64,000 nt of DNA. Origin: Saccostrea cucullata (taxonomy: Eukaryota). The DNA lies in assembly GCF_032062105.1 (NCBI RefSeq), contig NW_026931120.1:124001-188000 (forward strand), in the 5' to 3' direction. Numbering within the stretch: the stretch's first letter is position 1; each line of letters begins with the position of its first letter. The translations under genes and the position numbers were made by a program. The notes beneath the pieces were generated by a model. The model searched no databases, was not told where the DNA came from, and worked only from the letters and a program-made list of their open reading frames with translations. Shown piece after piece: positions 38,871 to 56,555 of this stretch.

Positions 38871-40872
38871 CCAAACATGGACTTTACAATTATAATCCAT
38901 TTATTTAATTTTAATTTTATAGCCATTTAGTAGGCAACTAATGCTTTCCTTGGATTTCTTTAGTTTAGTTTTGAATAAAATATATACCATTTTGCATAAA
39001 TGTACTGTTGTGGTGTTTATGTTATTTTCTTTACCCCATTCATGTTTAAAACCAGTACTGCTGGCGATTCTGTTAAGAAAAATGGAATTCGGCATTAATA
39101 TGTGTACACAGTAACTGATTCCTCTATGCCGTTAACAGGAAACTGTTGAAAATGACAGATTTGGCGTAAATATTAACACTGTTTATGAAAAAGACATTAA
39201 AAGTAAGGAAGAGTAAACAGTTTTTACGTTATTTCCCCCCATTAACTTCGATGGGGAATTGTTTGGTACAAACAACAATTAAGATTCAACATCATAATTT
39301 AAAATGAAACAAGAAATGTAACAAAATCAGCAAATTTAATAAGTGTTTTGTTCAATATGATAGTCATGTTTTTTTGCTATTTTTTTTTTTTCAGGTATTG
39401 CATTTAAACAGTTTGTTTTTCTATGGAAGGTTGTAAGTATATTATACAGAAGCATTTTTTTTAATGAAAATCATCAATGGTACATTTTTAAAAATTTTAT
39501 TAGACCGCCTCTTAATTTATAAGTTGCAGATTTTTCTTATTAGTTGTTAAGGGAACTAGATGTTTGTTAGGAAACATTTTGTGTTGGTGTTTATCCTTTA
39601 TACTGGTACTTCGTTTTAAATATACATGAAGGTCCTTACCTTACAATTTGGTCTTCTGACAATCTTAACCTTGGCCGACTTTAGGAAAATTGATTCACAA
39701 ATATTCAACACATGGATGTTTTCTTAGAAAAATTACAGTTTTTTGGATTGGACAGTTACATGTATTCACGATAATATCTGTCATTCGTTATTTCCGCATT
39801 TCATATAATTATTATATTAACTCCCCAACCTTATTTTCCGCCTCATTTAAACAATAATATGCTTGTTTGTTTGTTAGTGTATTGGAATTACAGTTGCAGC
39901 TGTTGCAGGAAAATTACAATACCCGCGCTATATACAAACGGGTTATGTAAATATTTTTTGCATTAACAGCAACCGTTTATTTCCGTCACAATTAACAAAT
40001 AAAACATTGTATTGTTCATATTTATGTCCATATGAATAATCATATAAACGATAGGTTTCCACATGTTTATTTTATTTTGTTATACTGATAGGTCATTCTA
40101 TTTTTCCTTGATGGAAAAACCACTGCTCAAGATAACTATATATTTATTGTTTACCATTGACCAAAGAAACCCGTGGCTTAAAGCTACACATATATGTATA
40201 ATTATACAATTCAGGCAAGTGACAAAGGATTCAAAATTATGCACAACATACAAATTAATGTATTTAATAAGCATATGGTTAAAAGAAATTCAAAACAAAA
40301 TTAATGCAAAATTTAACCAAAATATGATAAATCTTTAATCGTTATCAAACGAATTTTAATGTGTTTTCTTTTGTACTTATAGCTTGAAATAAATATTTAC
40401 AAAGATTCTGAGTTTGTTTTGATACACTTTTGGCTTGCTAAGTGGCCTTAAAGAATTGATAAACAATCATGGTTTTCTTAAAAAAAGAAGATAAATATGT
40501 TTTCAGCATCCAATCTCTGTTCGCTTCACCTATCGCTGATACCTCTTTCAAGCAGATTTTGTCATATCGTTCAGTGGGGCATAAACGGATGTAAATGTAA
40601 TAATTATTATTTGTTGATTATTCTGCTGATGTTGTGGCTGATCATTTTTGAGATTAACTCAAAGTTAATTTTTCCGCTTCTTTGCTGCTAAGGTCAAATT
40701 AAATTGACAGAAAAAATTGAGATCCTTGGAACCATGCATTAAAGCAATATGTTTTGATGAATTTTTCTACAAATGTCTTATGGCACGTGAGTTGTCAAAC
40801 TTTAATGTACAAGTTTAACACAAGCACAATACGCTGTACTGTAAACATTTTGTTGGTGGGGGTATGTCTTTG

Positions 40873-41054
40873 TTAGGGCAGAGATCCTGAACAAGCCACA
40901 TCCATATAACAATCCCAGAATGCCTTCCTTTCAGCAGCAACCACACCTGCCTGTACACATATACGAGGGGGTACCGCGGTTACGTTTTCCATATCCTGTC
41001 CGCTTCCGTGATTAGAGTACACTGGAGCGTATCTCCGATAACACACCGCATCTT
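40873..41054 (-). CDS. Distal terminal exon B of the Q/P-rich gene (paralog of exon A)
   Basis: Phase-1 acceptor ttttgcag; (E)DAVCYRRYAPVYSNHGSGQDMENVTAVPPRICVQAGVVAAERKAFWDCYMDVACSGSLP*. Confidence 0.8.
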
Positions 41055-44000
41055 CTGCAAAATGAAAGTTCTGCTTAAATGGTTGTGAGAGTAGTATACC
41101 CACAATTTAAAAAAGTAAGGTAATCAAATACAAATACTCACCAGTATGAAGAAATTCTACTTTGTGTACTACTACATGGGTTAAACGAACTACATGTAAG
41201 TACTAGAAACAGGTGAACTTAGTTACACTAGGTCCATAATAGAGATTTACTCTGAACTTTTGAACAAGAAATGATCATATTAATTTGGCAAAAATGTGAA
41301 CGTCATGTACATGCAAGCACTCTGTTCTAGACTGCTCTATAACTCAATGCACATTTGATAAGGTACAGCATACTTTATTTGAACATACCCTATGCAAACG
41401 TGATCATTCAAAGTGGTCCCACCCATCCCCATAGGTCATGAATTGATTGAACAAAATTGAATATATAACTACTTGAGGATGCTTCTATTAAAATATATTT
41501 CATGATTCCTTTGCTGGTCATGATATTTTTAAAAGATGTTTTCTTTTGGATTCCTTTGTAAAACTGGCCCCGCCCTACCCCAGGGGTTGTGGTTTGGTTC
41601 CTTTTTGAAATTTACGTAAGCAATCATGGACTCATATATAATTTGATGATAAACATGATGTAAAATATTGACAATACAAGTTGATGAAACAAGTGCATGC
41701 TTTACCTATGAACAATTTCTAAAACGAGGAAAATTATTGACAAACAAGTTGATGAAACAAGAATATCAGCAGTTTCGTTTAAAGTCATCATTTCGTAAGT
41801 TCTTTGGTCGATACAATGACCTTGTCAGCAAATACGATTTATCATTGAGTCAGATGCTGACCTAAGTTTTTATACTAATTGTAAGCCCATTATTTATACA
41901 CTGAGTTGTCTGCGGATTTTTCCGTTTCCCCCTCGTTCATGACAAGTAGCACAAGGCGGGTGTGACTGGTCAGCAGGGATCTCTCTCCTCCATGGCACCT
42001 GATCCAAACCTCTGATGTTTTAGAGGTCCGTGCTTGCTCTTCTCCTATTTTGTATTCTTTTATGGACTTTGATATTGAATACTGTTCGTTATCTCCATAT
42101 CTTTCATGAGAATCATTTTATTTGAATTTTTTTTCAAAAATAAATGTAAGCAAAACATATTTTTATCTAACAAAAATTAAAAAAGAGTTATTCTCTCTTT
42201 TCAATGTCTGAATAATATTACTCATTGCAGCATGTTTAACCTCATGCGACAGTGCCTGAAAAAAACTTACTGTGTTGTTTTTGGGCTTAAAATGAGAAAT
42301 CTCATTTCTTTCCGTTAAAGATATTAATGTCTGTTATTAAACAATCCATCTATTTTTATTTTCTGCTTTGGTCAACTTCAAAATGAACAATTAACATATA
42401 TAATTTGGAAAAACGTGATCGCTCGACAAATACCACACCAAGACGTAAAAAATACGAATTTTAATCAAGTTTTGATTCACCAGGAATAAAAATATAGACA
42501 GTATGGAGCATATTTTGTAATTTATTTATCATTTAAACCGCATATATAGTAATGTTAATGCGATTTAAGAAAACAGTCACTATTTAAATACATACCGTTT
42601 TTAGAAAGCATTTCTTTAAAGTTAAAATAAATAAGTCAGAACGAATTATTAACTGCATGATTTTGAAAACATTAAAAGAGAAAAGACGTTGAGCTTCTAG
42701 AATTTGAGTGTACATGTATAATAAGACTGAGTAAAGATTTTAAATAACTGAGAAATGACTGCAAATTAAATGATTTCTGATACATTAAAGTTAATGAAAT
42801 GGCTCTTTTGTCTGCATTTGCGATACATATGTATAAATACACGACACACATGCACAGTTTTCTCCACGAAAATAATAATTCCATATCTTCTACATCACAC
42901 GTACACGTCGCCATGACACACTGGACGCCATGTTGTAAAGGCCACCATTTTCTTTTTGATTTTAAGGAGGAAAATTCTTGAAAATATATATAAAAGAGAA
43001 GTCTCCTCTGACTATTAACGGCATTAATAACAATGCCACTTCTCTCCTGTCTTTACACATTAGGGAATCCGGAACAGGCGTGGTCTTTGTAACATTCCCA
43101 GAATGCAGCTTGCTTGATTTTAACGATTTTTGAATCCTTGCACTGCCGTGGAGGTTTGAAGAACAGTTTTTTGCCTCCCTCTACATATTTTGGATCCCCC
43201 GGATAGATAGCGTTGTAATCCTGGTCACAAGTGAATCCTGAAAATTAAAATTCGATCAGAAGAATCTAACTTTCTTACAGACAATTGTCAGGAAAGCACA
43301 GTTTGTAAACGATTTAATGCTGGCACATGAACATGTATATATATTACTAAAACAGACTTACAGACAAAATGTAGTTAAAAATACAGGCATTAGACAATGT
43401 AAATATATGTAAAATAAAAAGACTTTTGAATTCATAAACATATATTTTTAATCTCTTTATGAAATTAAATGTTCCAATTAATAAAATTTTGATATTTTTT
43501 GCATATTTCTGAAGTTATCATATTTAAAATATTTGAAAACACAAAAATGCGAATATGTTTGTGGTATTTATACATATACATGTAAGTTATTATTGAAATA
43601 CAAGTACAAGCATTTACTTAGCCACCCATTTTACATGCAGCAAGATCAAAGCATCACAAAAGTTCTTGGTATAAAAAGTTTATATTTATATTTTCAACTC
43701 TTATAGAAATCTTTAAATTATCTTCTTTCAACATGTCACAGTTACACCATAAATCGGCAGATATGAATTTTGGATTCAATTTTTATGTTTGAATGACGAA
43801 AGATAGAAGAGATAACTTTTAGCTTTCTCTCTCTAAATGAACGAAAAAGGTATATGATCCAATGCAGGACTCCATAGCTGATTTAATCGTCACCAATGAT
43901 TTGTTAAAAAAAAACAAACAAACAAACAAACAAAACTCCAATCCCACCCCGTTGTGGTTAAATAAATTTTGCCTAATATAGAAAACTAAATTTTGCCTCA

Positions 44001-44476
44001 TGAAATTCATTTTTTGCCCGAAGTAGTACACAGAATTTTCACCTCTATGATAATTTTTTACCAATATAGTATACAAAATGTTGCCATACCAGGTATGTAA
44101 ATTTGATCAGATTTTCTATTTATCTCTCTATTTTTTTAACAGTAACTTACATAATTCCACAATTTTCCTCGAATTAGTAAAATAAATCTTCGACTTTATG
44201 CTTTAGTTGAAAATAATCTTACCTTATATGAAACATATCTTCAAACGAAAGAACTGTCGTCACTAGCAATGCCCTGTGTCACTTTATGCTTATACAATTG
44301 AAAATAATCTTACCAAAAATATGTAACAAGCTTCAAACAAAATAGAACTGATTATTACATATAACACTTGCTTTGTACTTGCTAGTAAGCTCAGAAACTA
44401 TTTTTATTCATACTTGAAGCAGAGAATTGCACTATTGTAATGAAAAAGCGAGTTATTAGCAGCTTTAACATCTTTT

Positions 44477-44512
<36 letters not shown>

Positions 44513-47500
44513 TTAACTTTTATAAACATACAGCTGTGTGCACACACATAAATTGCACACAAACAGAAATTATGGCAAACAGAAATTGTAAACACTTTAA
44601 TAGAATGAAGTCGATTTGCATATCGATGGGAAAGGATTTTTTTTAACAATGTAATGATATTTAAGAGACATGTTTTAGTAAAGAGATACATTGATCAAAT
44701 TTGTGATGAACAATAAATGTCAAAATAACACCGCCAAAATGCCTCCCTTTCAGCTTTCACGATTTCATCTCGAACACACTTCGCCTGCGGAGGCGGAAGT
44801 TTGACGTCATTCATACTCAGTGACGCGTTTTTAGCCAACATTTCGCCAACTTCATAATCAGGAAGATATCGTTTGTAGCAAGTATTTCCTATAGAAACAA
44901 ATTTTAAGAATGGAGGCGTACAAGGCTAGGACAATCCCCCGCTCTGAGAAAAGACATTTATCAATTCTTAAATTTCATGAAAGCTATATTTTTCAAAATT
45001 ATTATGGTTTATATAATCTTTTACACATTTAATTCTGTATTTCATTGTTTTAATATTTTATTAATAATTTATTTTTCACTCATGTTTTTAGGATATTTGA
45101 AAACAAAAAAAAGGAAAAGCTTCAAGTATGATTCGAACACACTTCATAGCGAAGGGTTTATAGCAACACCCACCGCGTTAACCACTACGCTACGAAGTAT
45201 ATATGCATTACAGTTGTCTGTCAGTGTGATTTAAATGAACGGGTTTGTTGAAGGGTATACTTTTTCAGAATTGTTCGATTTTCATATAGAATGGGTTCAG
45301 ATTCCATTTTTTGACAAATGAAATAGATTTCACATTTACGTTTCCATCATTTAAGCTTTAACGAAGAATGGAGACTTGACCCATTCATGTTTTATGGCTC
45401 TAGTAAACCCATTTTCCACTAAATATGCTTAACTGTCAACTTTGAAATAAAGTTTGTCAAATGATAAATCGTTCAGTAAAGTAAAATAATAAAATGTTTT
45501 GAAGATGACATTACTGAGAACATGATTTTAGAAAAATATTACTTTTCCGTGAATTTTGAAAATTGAGAAATATATTGTCTCAGAGCGAGGATTTGTCTAC
45601 GCCTTTTACACCCTCTTTCTTTGCATATTTAAATGTATGCACAAGTACTCTACATATTTATAGTTTTATTCATTTTCTTAAAATTGTAGTATTAATAAGT
45701 AAACTAAACATAAAACATCAATATACGAGTACATTCTTTGTAAGCAGGTGCACTTTAAATAGGCATGCTGTGCTGACATAGACAATGATGCAGATAAATT
45801 TAAAAATTTTGAAAAAAAAAATTAACAAAAAAGGCACATGTTCAATGTAAAAATTTTGCATGATAATACAAAATGATTGTTTTTACTTACCTAAAGAGCA
45901 CGGACAGAGATCGTCACATCGATCACCAAGACCGGGGGTGCGGACCCAACATTTTCCAGCAGCTGTTATAAATATATTTACAAACTTAATAAGAATTTTC
46001 ACAATAAAATTCAAACTTTATTCAAATAATTTCTATCATCACTCATATAAAATATGCTTCACAATTGCAAACAACGAAACTCGACGTGTAATGGGCATAT
46101 GCAAATGTTTTTTTTTTATCTTATTGAGCCTAAGCTTACTGCTTGTAAGTGAAAAAGGATTTAAGTGAAATTCAAGTTTAAAAAAAATAAAATTTGATCT
46201 AGACTTACTTTGATAGGGATTTAAACTGTTGGGACCATATGTGGCCATGTCCAGTAGCTGTCTATCAGGTCCGTAACAACATCCCACCTTACATTCCTGT
46301 GTGGTGTAGCAGAGGGTTCCCTCACCCATCACGGTGGAGGAAACGGGGGGAGCGGGTGTGGTTACAACAGGAGCTGGACAAAGATCAAGAGCAGAGGTTA
46401 AAAAATATTAACTCCAGAAAGTATAAAGAATATTTCACCTCAAGGACACACAATTGTATTGTTTTGTATTGTCTTGGTTACAATTTTTTGTATTTTTTTT
46501 TCAGTATTTCCGAGTAAAATAAATATTCAACAATTAAATAAATATTCAATTAAATTAGGCCTAGTAGATATCTAATATGAGATATATATATAGATAGATA
46601 CATGTAGATAGATAAGGCGTGTCTTGCAAATAAAGAAATGCAGGATATTTAATGCCAGTTATAAATCACGTGACAGTTTCTGATGAATATCTATGATTAT
46701 TTTTTTCATAGCTCAGTTTTATGAATTAACGTTAACAAAATCTTTATTAGATACATATATAGATAATATACATAGATATATATAATGTTCAGTTTTCATC
46801 ATTCAAACAGAACAAACAAAGGTAGGTGAACTAATTCCACTGTCTTCCAAATTTTACCAATATATCTCCAGATGGATAATCAAAGAACCAGGTAGTGCAT
46901 AAAAGTAATACACAGAATTATTAGTAAAGACAAAATACAATTGCCGTAAACTCAAATGAACTGAAAAAGAAAGTCTGATAGAAATAAATGTGTGTGAATA
47001 TAGGTGATAAAAGAGGTAGTAGGTAGGATATAAGTGCAGAGAAGTGAAAATTAAGCGAAGTGTGCAAACCGACTAGTCAACGTTAGTTTATATGGTATTA
47101 TTTCAAAACATTGTGTTTAGAAAATTATATTAATAATTATGTTAACAGTCGGTATACGAAGAAGCTAGGCGCCGTGTCCATTTCGTTAATACAATAAAGC
47201 TCTGTGCGTATTTAACCTGGGGTAGGAGGCACGTATGCGGGCGTAGTGGGCTGATAGATCATAGCAGCAGTGGTCCAGGGCGCTTGAGGAGCGGGGGTTG
47301 CAATAGGGTCGGGTCTGCCGGCAAAAATAGGCTTAACAGGGGCAGCAGGTACATTCTGAACGTTAGGCTGAACACCGCCTTGTTGTCCCGGTTTGCCAAC
47401 AAAAGGCTGTCTTTGTTGAACCTGTGGCTGCTGATAAGGTGGTTGTTGCTGTTGTTGTTGTTGAACACCTACACCTGGTTGCTGGGGCTGATAAACTTGT

Positions 47501-50047
47501 TGTTGTTGACCAGGTTGTTGATTTTGTAGATAATCAGCAAATGAAGCGCTTGATTGAGTAGTTGTTCCTAATTGTAATGTTTCGGGAAGACCACCGGGCA
47601 TTTGTTGATTGCCCTGTGATTGTTGCGGTGGGTACGGACCTTAAATTTTTCAAATTAATGGAATATCATTTTGAAATTTGTTTTCATTAAAGTTTCAAAG
47701 TATGTATTCAAATCTATACAACAAAATGTATATATCATATATTTTCAAAACACTTATAATTCTTGTTTTATTTCTGAGTACTAAAATCAGTCTTACCTGG
47801 TTGTTGCCACTGATTTTGCATTTGTTGTTGCTGTTGCCATTGGTTTTGTGGATCAGGTTGAACTTGCTGGGGTTGTTGTTGTTGTTGTTGCCATTGATTT
47901 TGTGGATCAGGTTGTTGTTGTTGTTGTTGTTGATTTTGAGGTGGATACCACTGGTTTTGCTGAGGCTGTTGTTGAGGCTGTTGGTTATTCTGTTGGGGAG
48001 GCTGGTATTGCTGTTGTTGGGATCCAGGTCCTTGATACCACTGCTGCGGTTGCTGTGGTTGCTGGGGTTGAACCTGGGGTTCTTGTTGTTGAGGTGGCCA
48101 CTGTTGTTGTTGTTGTTGACCTTGTTGACCAAGTGTATTTACTTGAGGTTGATTATTTTGTGGGGGTTGATACCACTGGTTTGACTGTTGTTGTTGTTGC
48201 GGTTGTTGTGGTCCTTGATTAGGCTGTTGATATTGGGGTTCTGGATTTTGAGCAGGTCCTTGATTCCAGCCTTGTTGCTGAACTGCAGGTTGCTGCTGCT
48301 GTTGAGGTGGTTGGCGAGCTTGTTGTGATGGTTGCTGATTATTATTCCACTGCTGTTGAGCTGGTTCTGGTTGAGTTCCCTGCTGAGATGTTTGCGGATT
48401 GTTCCATTGTGGCTGTGGCTGTTGTGGCCAACCTTGCTGTCCCGGTTGTTGAGATTGTGGTTGTTGGTATATTTGTTGTGATTCAGTTGGTTGTGGCTGA
48501 AATTGTTGCTGTGGTTCTTGCTGTTGTTGATAGGGTGATTGTGCTACTGGTTGCTGCTGCTGATATTGTTGTTGTGGGTCGGGTTGTTGTTGCTGCTGCT
48601 GTTGTCGCTGATACGGCCAGCCTCCTTGTTGTTGTTGCTGCTGCTGCTGTTGTTGATTTGAACCAACTGTTTGTGGATATTGCACATTACTAGACGGCTG
48701 CTGATTTGGATATTGTTGTTGTGGTTGTTGGTTTTGTTGCTGTTGTGGTGTTCGATCTGGTCCAAATGCAAATGGTTGACTCTACAGAAACCAAGAAATA
48801 ATTCAAAATCACATGAGATGCCAAATAGTTCTAATTATTTGTCAAAAAACAGTCAATATAGAGAGAAATTACTATAATGTCGTGTTTTTTAAAATGTGTA
48901 TAGTTCGGTTTAATGCGTTTTCTCCTTTCATGTCCAAGAACAAGTGCCTGTTCTAATTTTTCATGATGAAGAATTCCTTATTTTTATAACCGTGTCTTGT
49001 TACCTGTGCCTGACTTAGTTTGGTCTGGGAGGTTTGCTGGACGGGTTGGGGGATCTGGACTGTTTGTGGTCTCTTCACTGCCTGGGGCCGCTGTATTGTT
49101 TGTGGTATCTGAACCGTTTTCTGTGTGCCTCCTCTACCTGCCGTTCTCTTCCATGTGCTTGACGGTTTAAAAGAAAATGTCCTTTTCCCTCCACCGGCTG
49201 TAAATGTTTGCTGAAAACATAAGGAATATTAATAATTATTAATGATATTCTGCCTTCGAGAAAAGAGATATGAACATTGTTTTAATTTCCTGTTGTGAAA
49301 TTTAAAGAAGAAAAAAATTAGTGATTCCTACTCTTTATGTCTTTGTTACATCAGGTGTATAGCAACAGATGAACAAATAAAACGTAACGATGTATATAAC
49401 ACTAAAACATTTCTGTATTTTGTAGTATATACATAACTTTTCTCATGAGTCACATTTAAAATTATTAACCAAACATTTCTGTATTTTGTAACATTTACAT
49501 TATTTTTCTCATAAGTCACATTTAAAAATTTTAACCAAACATGTCTGTATTTTGTAACATATACATAATTTTTCCCCATAAGTCACATTTTAAAATTTTA
49601 ATTCCAATTCTGCATGGCCGTTGGATTGAATATATATATGAAAAAAACAAAGGTGTTTTATGGCTTATGCCATAATGACTTATCCCACACATTATGCAAA
49701 GAAAATATGCAAGACATACATAGATGATTGCCCTCAAAAATAATATCATTATTCAGCAAGTCATGTTATAATGTATTGTGCCTATTTTGAATGGCATATC
49801 AACTACATTAGAAAAAGGTTTCATTATCGAATAATTATAATAAATTTCAGTTTAAATCATGGTGACAGTTGAATGCAATTCTAATTCAACAAATTGCTAA
49901 CAATGATCGCTCATTCATGGGTCACTGTGTTCATAAACTTGCTGTGTGTATGATGGACATATTTGGACACTCCCTTATACATAGATAATTTTGATTAATA
50001 ATTTATTAAATATAAGAAATATTGAAGAATGTGCGATTGGTCCACGT

Positions 50048-54514: not shown

Positions 54515-56555
54515 TAGAGATAAAGAACAGTATTTGAGCTCAAACGTCCATATAAACAATACAAAATAGGAGCAGAGCAAACACGGACCTCCAAAGCTTC
54601 AGAGGTGGAATCACAGCTATTGCAGAAGTGTCTAAAACTACATTGAGTACTAGCAAATAAAACAACAAATCAACAAATGATAAATAGAACGAAAAACAAA
54701 GAGTTCTAAATACTTTCAGATGAAGGATATGGAGATAACGAACAGTATTCAATATCAAAGTCCATTAAACAATACAAAATAGGAGCAGAGCAAACACGAA
54801 CAACCGAAACTTCAGAGGTGGGATCAGGTGCCATGGAGGAGTGAGCATCCCCTGCCGACCGGTCACGCCCGCCGTGTGCTCCTTGTCCTGATCGGGAAGT
54901 AACGGAAAAATCCAAAGTCAATTCAGTGTATCAGTAATGGACTAACGATTGGTATGATAAACGTCAGTCAGCATTTGACTCGATGATAAATTGTATTTGC
55001 TGACAAGGTCACTGTATCGACCATAGAACTTATGAAATGATGACTTTAAACGAGACTTCTGATATTCTTGTTTCATCAACTTGCTTGTCAATAATTTGCC
55101 TCGTTTAAAAAAATTGTTCGTATGTAGAGCATGCTCTTGCGTATCGAATCAACTTCGATATATATACTCCGTATGCAGGCGATGAAGGTATATTGCTGCA
55201 TAAATAAGGGAAGTTGACGATAGAAAAGTTAAAGTCATCACGTTTATCATAGAACTTGCTTATTAGATTTCCCTTTTTCAAATAAAATATCTAAGTATGA
55301 AACAGATGTGTCAGACTCTATGGTATTTTTTATCTCAAGCTCACCAGGATATATCGTATAACGAACAGTATTCAATCTCTAAGTCCATAAAAAAAATACA
55401 AAATAGGAGCAGAGCAAACACGGACCTCCGAAACATCAGAGTTGGGATTAGGTGCCAAAACATTTTTACATCCCCTGATTTCCGTATTCCGTCTTATGTC
55501 ACACCCGCCAAATGCTCCTTGTCATTAAACGGGAAATAACTGAAAAAGGGTGTAAATAATGGCCTAAATAATTCTCATGAAACATGTCAGTCAGCATTTG
55601 ACATTATGATAAATTGTATATGCTGATAAGGTCATTGTATCGATCATAGAACTTTCGAAATGACGACTTTAAACGAGACTGATGATATTCTTATTTCATC
55701 AACTCGTTTGTCAGTAATTTACCTCATTTTAAAAATTGTACATACGTACAGCATGCTCTTGCGTATCGGATCAATTGAGAAATATAAACCCGTATGCAGG
55801 TGAGGAAGGTATATTGCTGCATAAGTAAGGAATGTTAACAATTGAAAAATAATAAAGTCATCGCGTTTATCATTGAGCTTGTTTGTTAGATTACCATTAA
55901 CATCTTTTTCAAGTTAAATATCCAAATATGAAACAGATATGTTAGATTCTGTGGGGTTTTTTTTTATCTCAAGCTCAACGGGATATATCGAATCGACATA
56001 AGAATGGAAATAACCCTGGTATATGACAATACGTAGTCGGTATATTTTAATGTCGAGTTGAAGGCCACAGCAAGTGTTTTTTTTTCTTTTCACGTATAAG
56101 ATTATGGACAAATGTTCCTTCATATTAATTTAGGAAACCAAGTCTTCCAACAAACAAGTTGTTCAACATTCAACTGGCAATAATTGTGCCCATTTATATG
56201 CTGACCTGTTTATTTCTTTATTTAAAAAAATTACAGTAAAACACTAGCTGTCGACTTCAGCTCGACATTTAAATATATGGACGATATATTATTAATTGAC
56301 AATAGTTATGATTAATAACACAGCTCCATGATAAACGTGATTCTCAACTTTCCCTGCATATGCAGCAATATACCGGTACCCTTATCACCTGCATATGGAA
56401 TTTATATCTCGCAGTTGATTCGAATTTCAGAGCATGCTCTAAGTAAGAGCAATTTCTAAAATTGATGAAAGAATAATATCAACAGCCTCGTTTAAAGTTA
56501 CCATTCGATATTTCTATGGTCGATACTATGACTTTGTTTGCAAATACAATTATCA
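54515..56555 (-). mobile_element. Cluster of Penelope-like copies: tandem minus-strand units plus an inverted, more decayed plus-strand copy
   Basis: 3' tails on the minus strand at ~54515-54615, ~54730-54900 and ~55360-55520; RT C-terminal remnants at 54960-55360 and 55580-56120; plus-strand remnant 56130-56555 (NCAPL.ADLF, FKYMDD, SPAYGIYISQLIR, FYGRY). Confidence 0.85.

What the first reader, a model, noticed from the sequence alone, without database searches (positions are those of the whole stretch)
40873..43237. Duplicated, mutually exclusive last exons swap half of a cysteine-rich domain
Seen: two intact phase-1 terminal exons ~2 kb apart share C-x(n)-PPRxC-x11-AFWxCYxDxACSGxP but are otherwise highly diverged (A is Lys-rich and basic; B is near neutral and has an NVT sequon). 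Either supplies the last 4 of 12 Cys after the shared ...CDDLCPCSL exon. No upstream exons for a separate gene were seen between them. Inference: conservation of Cys/aromatic positions despite divergence implies both are selected, giving two isoforms with different binding surfaces on the same Q/P scaffold.
Basis: partly seen in the sequence, partly recalled or inferred. Interest (0 to 1): 0.75.

Follow-up and report, generated by a model that had tools for sequence, protein, structure and literature searches.

The report
Three last-exon copies, one seen used
A bivalve gene for a secreted glutamine-rich protein carries three old, intact copies of its final coding exon, but the RNA data examined show only the middle copy in use, so a switch between protein tails is plausible yet unproven.

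Summary
Each has an AG acceptor, four Cys and its own stop. They are the only copies in the 1.17-Gb assembly, and the upstream Cys exons are single-copy.

RNA from four runs of four studies joins the shared donor 45891 only to exon A (69 raw reads plus contigs in the other three). Exon B has zero depth in 4 of 4 runs. Exon C appears only as low-depth contigs not spliced at its acceptor, in 3 of 4 runs.

The copies are nevertheless ancient (synonymous sites saturated). Each type has intact counterparts in other sequence sources. Scallop and pearl-oyster proteins end in a single B/C-like exon, so A is the derived copy. B and C were therefore under coding selection for a long time, but isoform switching is not shown.

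The domain resembles the colipase/prokineticin/Dickkopf fold only weakly.

This is a new member of a known kind: alternative C-termini derived from tandem exon duplication.

The parts
47217..47640 (-). Second Gln/Pro-rich exon of the gene. The 3' end (donor) is fixed at 47217. The 5' boundary was not determined, so the open frame is given.
   Evidence: Open frame. In one search, 68 X12 reads and contigs of X4 and X7 run on beyond 46377 with letters that lie at 47250-47221 of the window, 3 mismatches, just before CCAG|GT.
46209..46373 (-). Shared Cys exon 1 (Cys 1-4, C-x5-C-x3-CC). Single copy in the genome.
   Evidence: Joint 45962/46209 in 4 of 4 runs. Acceptor read. One match in the whole assembly. 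Weak Colipase N hit, E 0.066, below cut-off.
45891..45962 (-). Shared Cys exon 2 (Cys 5-8, ...CDDLCPCSL). Its donor G|GT at 45891/45890 leaves one base of a split codon (phase 1).
   Evidence: Joints on both sides in 4 of 4 runs. 3 of 3 listed strain differences are synonymous.
44695..44888 (-). Terminal exon copy C, not in the finding. Phase 1, AG acceptor, 63 codons plus the split codon, 4 Cys, NAS sequon, own stop. Proximal copy, inside the intron that is removed when A is used.
   Evidence: Counterpart P0004, 45/63 identical, same stop. RNA: only low-depth contigs (3.4, 3 and 35.4) that run 12 nt past the acceptor. No joint. Nothing in the raw-read run. ATTAAA at 44601 and AATAAA at 44408.
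42500..43237 (-). Terminal exon copy A. Coding 43237-43053 including the stop, then the 3' UTR. AATAAA at 42526; the poly(A) end near 42500 is approximate. This is the copy used in all RNA examined.
   Evidence: Joint 45891 to 43237 with GT..AG ends: 69 reads in X12 and contigs of depth 530, 22.5 and 8017 in X1, X4, X7. 4 of 4 listed strain differences are silent. Spliced A-type transcript of a relative, P0003. Hexamer.
40873..41054 (-). Terminal exon copy B. Phase 1, AG acceptor, 59 codons plus the split codon, 4 Cys, NVT sequon, own stop. Distal copy, beyond the poly(A) region of A. ATTAAA at 40806.
   Evidence: Counterparts P0005 (33/60) and P0019 (31/60) with the same stop. RNA depth 0 in 4 of 4 runs across 40700-41463.
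47771..48781 (-). Large Gln-rich open frame (337 codons) with periodic Trp/Tyr. Presumed upstream exon of the same gene. Boundaries not determined.
   Evidence: only. Not covered by the reads call.
41655..42227 (.). Interspersed repeat between exon A's 3' end and exon B. Not part of the gene's coding sequence; listed because it dominates the RNA depth in this interval.
   Evidence: Depth up to 77,629 with many contigs, internal joints and loose ends in all runs. A related peptide lies at 55148-54945. No Pfam family.

Best explanation
This is one gene on the minus strand. It encodes a secreted protein with a long Gln/Pro-rich scaffold followed by a 12-Cys C-terminal domain. The last coding exon was duplicated twice, long ago. 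That exon supplies the last strand(s), a loop, a C-terminal helix and Cys 9-12. The gene now carries three homologous terminal exons in the order C, A, B, each with its own acceptor, stop and poly(A)-type hexamer.

Shown: the donor at 45891 is joined to the middle copy, A, in every RNA sample examined, and A is the most derived copy.

Inferred: B and C still resemble the single terminal exon of scallops and pearl oysters, and both have stayed open and conserved. They are therefore most probably facultative alternative last exons. The choice would be a coupled splice-site and poly(A)-site decision. Using C needs its acceptor to win and cleavage upstream of A. Using B needs A to be skipped and its poly(A) site read through. 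Such use would occur in tissues, stages or conditions not among the four runs. Each choice would give the same scaffold a domain with a different C-terminal third.

Confidence differs by part. The anatomy and the dominance of A are about 0.95. That B and/or C are really used is about 0.5.
For: Three copies, same phase, AG acceptors and own stops. They are the only copies in the assembly, and the upstream Cys exons are single-copy.

Joint 45891 to 43237 in 4 of 4 runs: 69 reads in X12 and contig depths 530, 22.5 and 8017.

The duplication is ancient and under purifying selection on average: pS 0.70-0.94 against pN 0.40-0.45.

Intact counterparts of every type exist in other sources. A: P0003, P0001, P0013 at 48-49/60. 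C: P0004 at 45/63. B: P0005 at 33/60 and P0019 at 31/60. C-type and B-type keep the stop at the same place.

Named proteins of Pinctada imbricata, Argopecten irradians, Pecten maximus and Mizuhopecten yessoensis end in one B/C-like exon. Against Pinctada, B is 33/64 and C is 31/62, while A gives only a 13/30 local match. In the tree, A sits on a very long branch, 100/100.

Poly(A)-type hexamers lie 67-94 nt after the stops of B and C.

Homologous C-termini made from duplicated 3' coding exons through alternative poly(A) use are a documented class: 77 of 236 human events, some with three or more C-termini (PMC8373072, passages read).
Against: No read or contig joins 45891 to C or B in any of the 4 runs. 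B has zero depth in all four.

The C contigs run 12 nt past its acceptor, so they are not spliced there. Their low depth fits pre-mRNA of the A form, in which C is intronic.

Of the 5 listed strain differences in C, 3 change the amino acid. In the shared exons and A, 0 of 12 do.

No spliced B- or C-ending transcript of a close relative appeared in the protein searches. One search gave 4 hits of 660 candidates. One search gave 4 of 458. One search gave 11 hits.

A B-like ORF of one relative (P0007) has lost the conserved stop position.

I do not know whether the unnamed counterparts come from one species, so the relative rates of A, B and C are rough.
Confidence: 0.5

Rival explanations
1. B and C are recently retired exon copies. 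They were coding for most of their history, but in this lineage the derived copy A has taken over completely. B and C are now unused and have not yet decayed.
For: Only A is spliced in 4 of 4 runs. B has zero depth. C is unspliced and at 0.4-13% of the depth of the main contig. 3 of the 5 listed differences in C are non-synonymous, against 0 of 12 in A and the shared exons. P0007 has a shifted stop.
Against: Both frames are intact, with all four Cys, the aromatic motif, AG acceptors and stops at the ancestral place. C-type and B-type ORFs are equally intact in other sequence sources. Four samples of unknown tissue cannot show absence. Five differences are too few to tell relaxed from weaker constraint.
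Confidence: 0.33
2. B and/or C belong to a separate transcription unit, with their own promoter and upstream exons, rather than to the Gln/Pro-rich gene.
For: The X7 contig that holds C is 604 nt long, and only 214 nt of it lie on the stretch. Its two flanks (199 and 191 nt) were not placed.
Against: There is no second copy of Cys exon 1 or 2 in the window (best other matches E 0.13 and 0.23) or in the assembly. Each copy starts in phase 1 without a Met or signal peptide, and alone would be one third of a disulfide domain. The boundaries 44900 and 44687 are not splice sites on either strand. The unplaced flanks are as expected for diverged intron: neutral divergence between the runs and the window is high, with about 3-5% differences even in exons, all silent in the constrained ones.
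Confidence: 0.07
3. Assembly artefact: collapsed or mis-joined paralogues or haplotypes create apparent extra exons.
For: The assembly is fragmented: 23,869 contigs. No DNA-read depth was examined.
Against: The copies are only 34-44% identical as protein and detectable as DNA only over 40 nt at 65-75% identity. They are not haplotypes or recent paralogues. Each type has its own counterpart in other sources. RNA of another strain confirms the A arrangement and the C sequence in place.
Confidence: 0.02

Closest known systems
Alternative C-termini derived from tandem exon duplication, produced by alternative last-exon splicing coupled to alternative polyadenylation (Martinez-Gomez et al., NAR 2021, PMC8373072; passages read)
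   Same: Homologous 3' coding exons in tandem in one gene. Same phase, each with its own stop and poly(A)-type signal. The homologous residues complete the same domain. The duplication is old. The paper notes cases with three or more C-termini.
   Different: Here only one of the three exons is seen in transcripts, so membership as an alternatively spliced event is unproven. The swapped piece carries 4 of the 12 Cys of one disulfide-rich domain.
Colipase-fold proteins: colipase, prokineticin/Bv8/MIT1 and the Dickkopf C-terminal domain. Ten conserved Cys per PMC6425005 (passages read).
   Same: The Cys pattern begins C-x5-C-x3-CC. The CxC near the exon junction also recalls these families, but that comparison is from memory.

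The best Foldseek rows are procolipase 1pcn, colipase 1lpb and 1eth, Dkk1-C 3s2k and 3s8v, Bv8 2kra and MIT1 1imt. VIA aligns colipase 1eth_B over model residues 131-232, a range that includes Cys 9 and 10 of the terminal exon. The Atlas feature and structure leads are prokineticin, colipase and Dickkopf clusters.
   Different: No Pfam model reaches its cut-off on single exons or on five full homologues. There is no PDB sequence relative. Structure scores are weak: Foldseek E >= 0.2, VIA Z 2.9-3.5, Atlas 0.77-0.79.

There are 12 Cys, not 10, with an extra C-terminal helix. The domain sits at the C-terminus of a long low-complexity scaffold, about 590 aa in total in the scallop proteins, and is not a small free peptide.
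Uncharacterised pteriomorph proteins XP_069106547.1 (Argopecten irradians), XP_033726501.1 (Pecten maximus, named 'SETD1A-like'), XP_021354369.1 (Mizuhopecten yessoensis, named 'extensin-like') and KAK3088618.1 (Pinctada imbricata)
   Same: True homologues. They have a low-complexity Pro/Gln/Asn-rich scaffold followed by the same 12-Cys domain, with all 12 Cys invariant. The three scallop proteins also start with what looks like a signal peptide; the 259-aa Pinctada model does not.
   Different: Each is recorded with a single, B/C-like end. No A-type end was found outside close relatives of the window's organism. Whether their genes hold further terminal exon copies could not be examined here.

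Membership tests
Alternative last exons derived from tandem exon duplication | Two or more homologous coding exons in tandem within one gene | tested here: met
   Three copies, pairwise E 1.4e-11 to 1.1e-5 in the window. Only these three in the assembly. Alignment with 15 invariant columns.
Alternative last exons derived from tandem exon duplication | Each copy is compatible with the same upstream donor (same phase, functional-looking acceptor) and ends the reading frame | tested here: met
   All three are phase 1, preceded by a pyrimidine-rich tract plus AG, with a stop 60-64 codons later.
Alternative last exons derived from tandem exon duplication | Each copy has its own cleavage/poly(A) site | tested here: inconclusive
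   AATAAA or ATTAAA hexamers follow each stop. Only A's 3' UTR is covered by RNA. No 3'-end data.
Alternative last exons derived from tandem exon duplication | Transcripts join the common donor to each copy, one per transcript | tested here: not met
   Joint to A in 4 of 4 runs, to B in 0 of 4 and to C in 0 of 4. No spliced B/C form of a close relative. Only four runs of unknown tissue, at a 95% identity cut-off.
Alternative last exons derived from tandem exon duplication | Each copy is conserved in other species | tested here: met
   Counterparts: A 48-49/60, C 45/63, B 31-33/60. All are open, and C-type and B-type keep the stop position. The sources are unnamed, so species identity and spacing are unknown.
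Colipase fold (colipase / prokineticin / Dickkopf C-terminal domain) | Match to a family profile (PF01114, PF02740, PF06607, PF21479/PF21481) above its curated cut-off | tested here: not met
   Only Colipase N at E 0.066, 13.4 bits against a cut-off of 27, on Cys exon 1. 0 families on 5 full homologues.
Colipase fold (colipase / prokineticin / Dickkopf C-terminal domain) | Ten conserved Cys in the family's order | tested here: inconclusive
   12 invariant Cys. The first ten can be laid on the pattern by eye, and the colipase alignment covers model residues 131-232, which hold Cys 1-10. No disulfide map and no coordinates were available to me.
Colipase fold (colipase / prokineticin / Dickkopf C-terminal domain) | Significant structural similarity of a confident model | tested here: inconclusive
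   Domain pLDDT 83-91 for the shared part and 34-78 for the terminal exon. Colipase-fold chains top the Foldseek list but at E 0.2-8. VIA Z 2.9-3.5. Atlas 0.77-0.79 and TM 0.37.
Prokineticin (AVIT) hormones | Small secreted peptide whose mature N-terminus starts the Cys domain (AVIT motif; recalled, not from a call) | tested here: not met
   The Cys domain is the C-terminal ~125 residues, behind several hundred residues of Gln/Pro-rich sequence.

The most novel reading that the evidence does not exclude
One gene uses a three-way choice of terminal exon to rebuild the last third of a colipase-like disulfide domain (a strand, a loop, a helix and two disulfides). This would give three secreted proteins with different binding faces on the same Gln/Pro scaffold. 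The lineage-specific, Lys-rich A tail would be a neofunctionalised default. The ancestral-type B and C tails would be reserved for particular stages or tissues.
Probability: 0.35. Interest if true: 0.55.

Novelty: new member of a known kind. Interest (0 to 1): 0.33.

Why it matters
If B and C are used, this would be a clean invertebrate example of a disulfide-rich extracellular domain being re-tooled by terminal-exon choice. It sits in a bivalve-restricted, very highly expressed and wholly uncharacterised secreted protein family. It would also give a natural three-variant series for asking what the C-terminal lobe binds.

If they are not used, the locus shows takeover by a derived exon copy, with the ancestral-type copies left intact beside it. 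That is a useful caution for annotation pipelines and for readers who infer isoforms from intact duplicated exons alone.

Either way the gene model should list three candidate terminal exons. The RefSeq names of the scallop homologues ('SETD1A-like', 'extensin-like') are not backed by any Pfam match; I suspect the low-complexity scaffold produced them.

Tried and rejected
- Pfam on each exon alone gave only a sub-threshold Colipase N hit. The other two rows, DUF4070 and FBO_C at E about 0.2, I take as noise.
- Pfam on five full homologues gave nothing.
- A profile of the family against PDB sequences gave only low-complexity or chance rows.
- Two hits of the profile search were set aside. P0010 was fetched and is an unrelated bacterial-type repeat protein. 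P0002 (2247 aa, 13 short stretches) was not fetched; I assume it is of the same kind.
- P0009 and P0011 look like C-type and B-like exons read from bisulfite-converted DNA (Pro, Ala, Ser replaced by Phe/Leu, Val, Phe). I left them out of the tree and the counts.
- P0007 (partial) and the cluster members P0012 and P0014-P0016 were also left out of the tree. The tree used 13 rows.
- Direct DNA repeats find only the last 40 coding nt of the three copies, so the introns give no dating.
- No tRNA-like gene lies in 40500-46500, although a stretch near 45180-45240 looked tRNA-like by eye.
- A search for the homologues' accession numbers in papers found none. Supplements are closed, so shell, mantle or secretome proteome tables that may list them were not seen. 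The supplement of PMC6425005 with molluscan prokineticin-like sequences was not seen either.
- I could not see the unplaced flanks of the C-bearing contigs. Read laying allows one call, so lower identity cut-offs, DNA runs and further tissues stayed untested.
Database proteins of relatives (P0003, P0006, P0008, P0020, P0021) stood in for it.
Full report
**What is in the sequence.** The finding lies in a minus-strand gene.

Reading the minus strand and the open frames shows the following parts:
- a 337-codon Gln-rich frame (48781-47771);
- a second Gln/Pro-rich frame ending at 47217;
- Cys exon 1 (46373-46209, Cys 1-4);
- Cys exon 2 (45962-45891, Cys 5-8, ending ...CDDLCPCSL with one base of a split codon).

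Each follows an AG, reads in phase 1, holds four Cys and ends in its own stop.

A third copy, C (44888-44695), was missed. It has the same phase, an AG acceptor, four Cys and its own stop, and it lies between the shared donor and exon A.

The alignment of the three has 15 invariant columns, including the four Cys, PP, AFW, CY, D and CS.

A is Lys-rich (9 K, pI 8.7). B is acidic (pI 5.6) with an NVT sequon. C has pI 6.4 and an NAS sequon.

**More than chance, and not an artefact.**
- In the window, the pairs score E 1.4e-11 (B-C), 2.7e-8 (A-B) and 1.1e-5 (A-C).
- Six-frame searches of the whole assembly (1.17 Gb, 23,869 contigs) with each copy find only these three places. The query with A also gave two chance rows at E 2.1 and 4.7.
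- Cys exon 1 is single-copy in the assembly. Neither Cys exon has another copy in the window; the best other matches are E 0.13 and 0.23. So B and C are not the tails of extra gene copies.
- At the DNA level only the last 40 coding nt are recognisably repeated, at 65-75% identity.
- Synonymous sites between copies are saturated (pS 0.70-0.94) while pN is 0.40-0.45. The duplications are therefore old, and selection has acted on average against amino-acid change.

**RNA.** The look-up of sequencing runs listed 24 runs. Eleven of them, from 5 studies, hold 5-7% of the sampled words of 40700-46400.

I laid four runs from four studies: X12 (raw oligo-dT reads, about 47% of the run read) and X1, X4 and X7 (contigs).

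| Feature | X12 (raw reads) | X1 | X4 | X7 |
|---|---|---|---|---|
| Intron 46208-45963 removed | yes | yes | yes | yes |
| Joint 45891 to 43237 (exon A, GT..AG ends) | 69 reads (31+38) | contig depth 530 | contig depth 22.5 | contig depth 8017 |
| Exon B and surroundings (40700-41463) | depth 0 | depth 0 | depth 0 | depth 0 |
| Exon C | no reads | contig depth 3.4 | contig depth 3 | contig depth 35.4 |

- Reads running beyond 46377 continue with letters that lie at 47250-47221. This fixes the upstream donor at 47217.
- Exon C has no joint in any run. Its contigs all end at 44900, 12 nt upstream of the acceptor, so they are not spliced there.
- Neither 44900 nor 44687 is a splice site on either strand.

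The runs differ from the window by about 3-5% even in exons. Most laid reads are 95-99% alike (table 1). All 12 listed differences in Cys exon 1, Cys exon 2 and A are silent. Neutral divergence is therefore high, and intron flanks would fall under the 95% cut-off.

That explains why only the C exon block of those contigs could be laid. It also fits pre-mRNA of the A form: C is intronic in it, and B lies beyond A's poly(A) region.

In C, 2 of the 5 listed differences are silent and 3 change the residue. That is too few to decide, but it is less clean than A.

Caveats:
- only four samples, of unknown tissue;
- a 95% identity cut-off;
- 128 loose ends and 3287 contig pieces were not shown.

**Relatives.** I searched a profile of the three copies against 1.84 billion representatives. 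It gave 11 hits at E <= 0.001.

Nine were fetched:
- P0003 is a spliced 257-aa transcript product of a relative, with an A-type end.
- P0001 is an A-type genomic-style ORF, as is its cluster member P0013.
- P0004 is C-type.
- P0005 is B-type. P0019, another B-type ORF, came later.
- P0007 is a partial B-like ORF with a shifted stop.
- P0009 and P0011 appear bisulfite-converted.
- P0006 and P0008 are named proteins of Pinctada imbricata and Argopecten irradians.

Of the two hits not in that set, P0010 was fetched later and is unrelated. P0002 was not fetched.

A further search added Pecten maximus and Mizuhopecten yessoensis.

| Our copy | Nearest counterpart | Against Pinctada | Against Argopecten |
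|---|---|---|---|
| A | 48/60 | 13/30, local only | 19/64 |
| C | 45/63 | 31/62 | 26/63 |
| B | 33/60 and 31/60 | 33/64 | 29/63 |

In a 13-row tree, the A types form a 100/100 clade on a very long branch. C with P0004 is 100/100 and joins Pinctada at 82/84. B, P0005, P0019 and the scallops are unresolved. The tree is rooted at the midpoint only.

So the B/C form is ancestral-like, and A is a derived copy confined to the window's close kin.

Searches able to find spliced B/C forms in close relatives found none: 4 of 660 candidates and 4 of 458.

**The domain.**
- All 12 Cys are invariant in five homologues.
- No Pfam family matches the homologues, and there is no PDB sequence relative.
- AlphaFold2 models of P0003 (A-type) and P0006 (ancestral type), each from a 5-row alignment, give pLDDT 83-91 for the shared part.
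- In both models the terminal exon forms a strand, a low-confidence loop, a second strand and a C-terminal helix, at pLDDT 34-78 in P0003 and 47-83 in P0006.
- Foldseek's best rows are procolipase, colipase, Dkk1-C, Bv8 and MIT1, at E 0.2-8.
- VIA gives colipase Z 3.2 over residues 131-232, draxin Z 3.5 and Dkk1 Z 2.9.
- The Atlas gives prokineticin, colipase and Dickkopf clusters at 0.77-0.79.
- Passages of PMC6425005 describe the ten-Cys colipase fold of Dickkopf proteins and report prokineticin-like peptides across lophotrochozoans.

The leads all point to a colipase-like fold, but each is weak, so I do not file the domain as a member. If the resemblance holds, Cys 9 and 10 of the core come from the terminal exon.

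**Reading.** The anatomy is that of alternative C-termini derived from tandem exon duplication. This is a documented class that works through alternative last-exon splicing and poly(A) choice (PMC8373072, passages read).

What is shown:
- there are three old, intact, conserved copies;
- A is used in all four samples.

What is inferred:
- B and C are used elsewhere. Old duplicates do not stay open with every Cys and the stop in place unless they are translated.

The main rival is that they were retired recently.

**Verdict.** The finding is a new member of a known kind, of modest interest.

Noticed in passing
window 41655-42227 (and 54945-55148): Interspersed repeat between exon A's 3' end and exon B. 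RNA contig depth is enormous (up to 77,629 in X7), with many internal joints and loose ends. Its + strand ORF (41668-41865) has a close peptide relative at 55148-54945 on the minus strand. No Pfam family.
   Followed up: partly
window 40700-46400 against runs X1, X4, X7, X12: Runs under the same species label differ from the window by about 3-5% even in coding exons. Most laid reads are 95-99% alike, and all 12 listed differences in constrained exons are silent. The assembly and the RNA samples seem to be well-separated lineages or haplotypes. This makes a 95% cut-off blind to introns.
   Followed up: partly
proteins P0009 and P0011: Two database ORFs look like C-type and B-like exons translated from bisulfite-converted DNA (Pro/Ala/Ser replaced by Phe or Leu/Val/Phe). 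The protein collection apparently holds ORFs called on bisulfite-seq assemblies.
   Followed up: no
proteins P0020 and P0021: The RefSeq names of the scallop homologues are 'histone-lysine N-methyltransferase SETD1A-like' and 'extensin-like'. No Pfam family matches them; I suspect the low-complexity scaffold produced the names.
   Followed up: partly
window 44470-44520, 43899-43940, 45795-45832: Simple repeats in the introns, among them a (GA)n run at 44470-44520. The reads tool skipped them.
   Followed up: no
window 53142 (minus strand): An ATG opening MERRRILRLSVTLLLSMNVCLSSVYG looks like the signal-peptide exon of the same gene. That would make the gene span about 53142 to 42500 when it ends in A. 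Not checked with reads.
   Followed up: no
protein P0001: In one A-type ORF of a relative, the frame runs on past the conserved ...FPNV end for 35 more residues. The stop after exon A is therefore not fixed in all sources.
   Followed up: no
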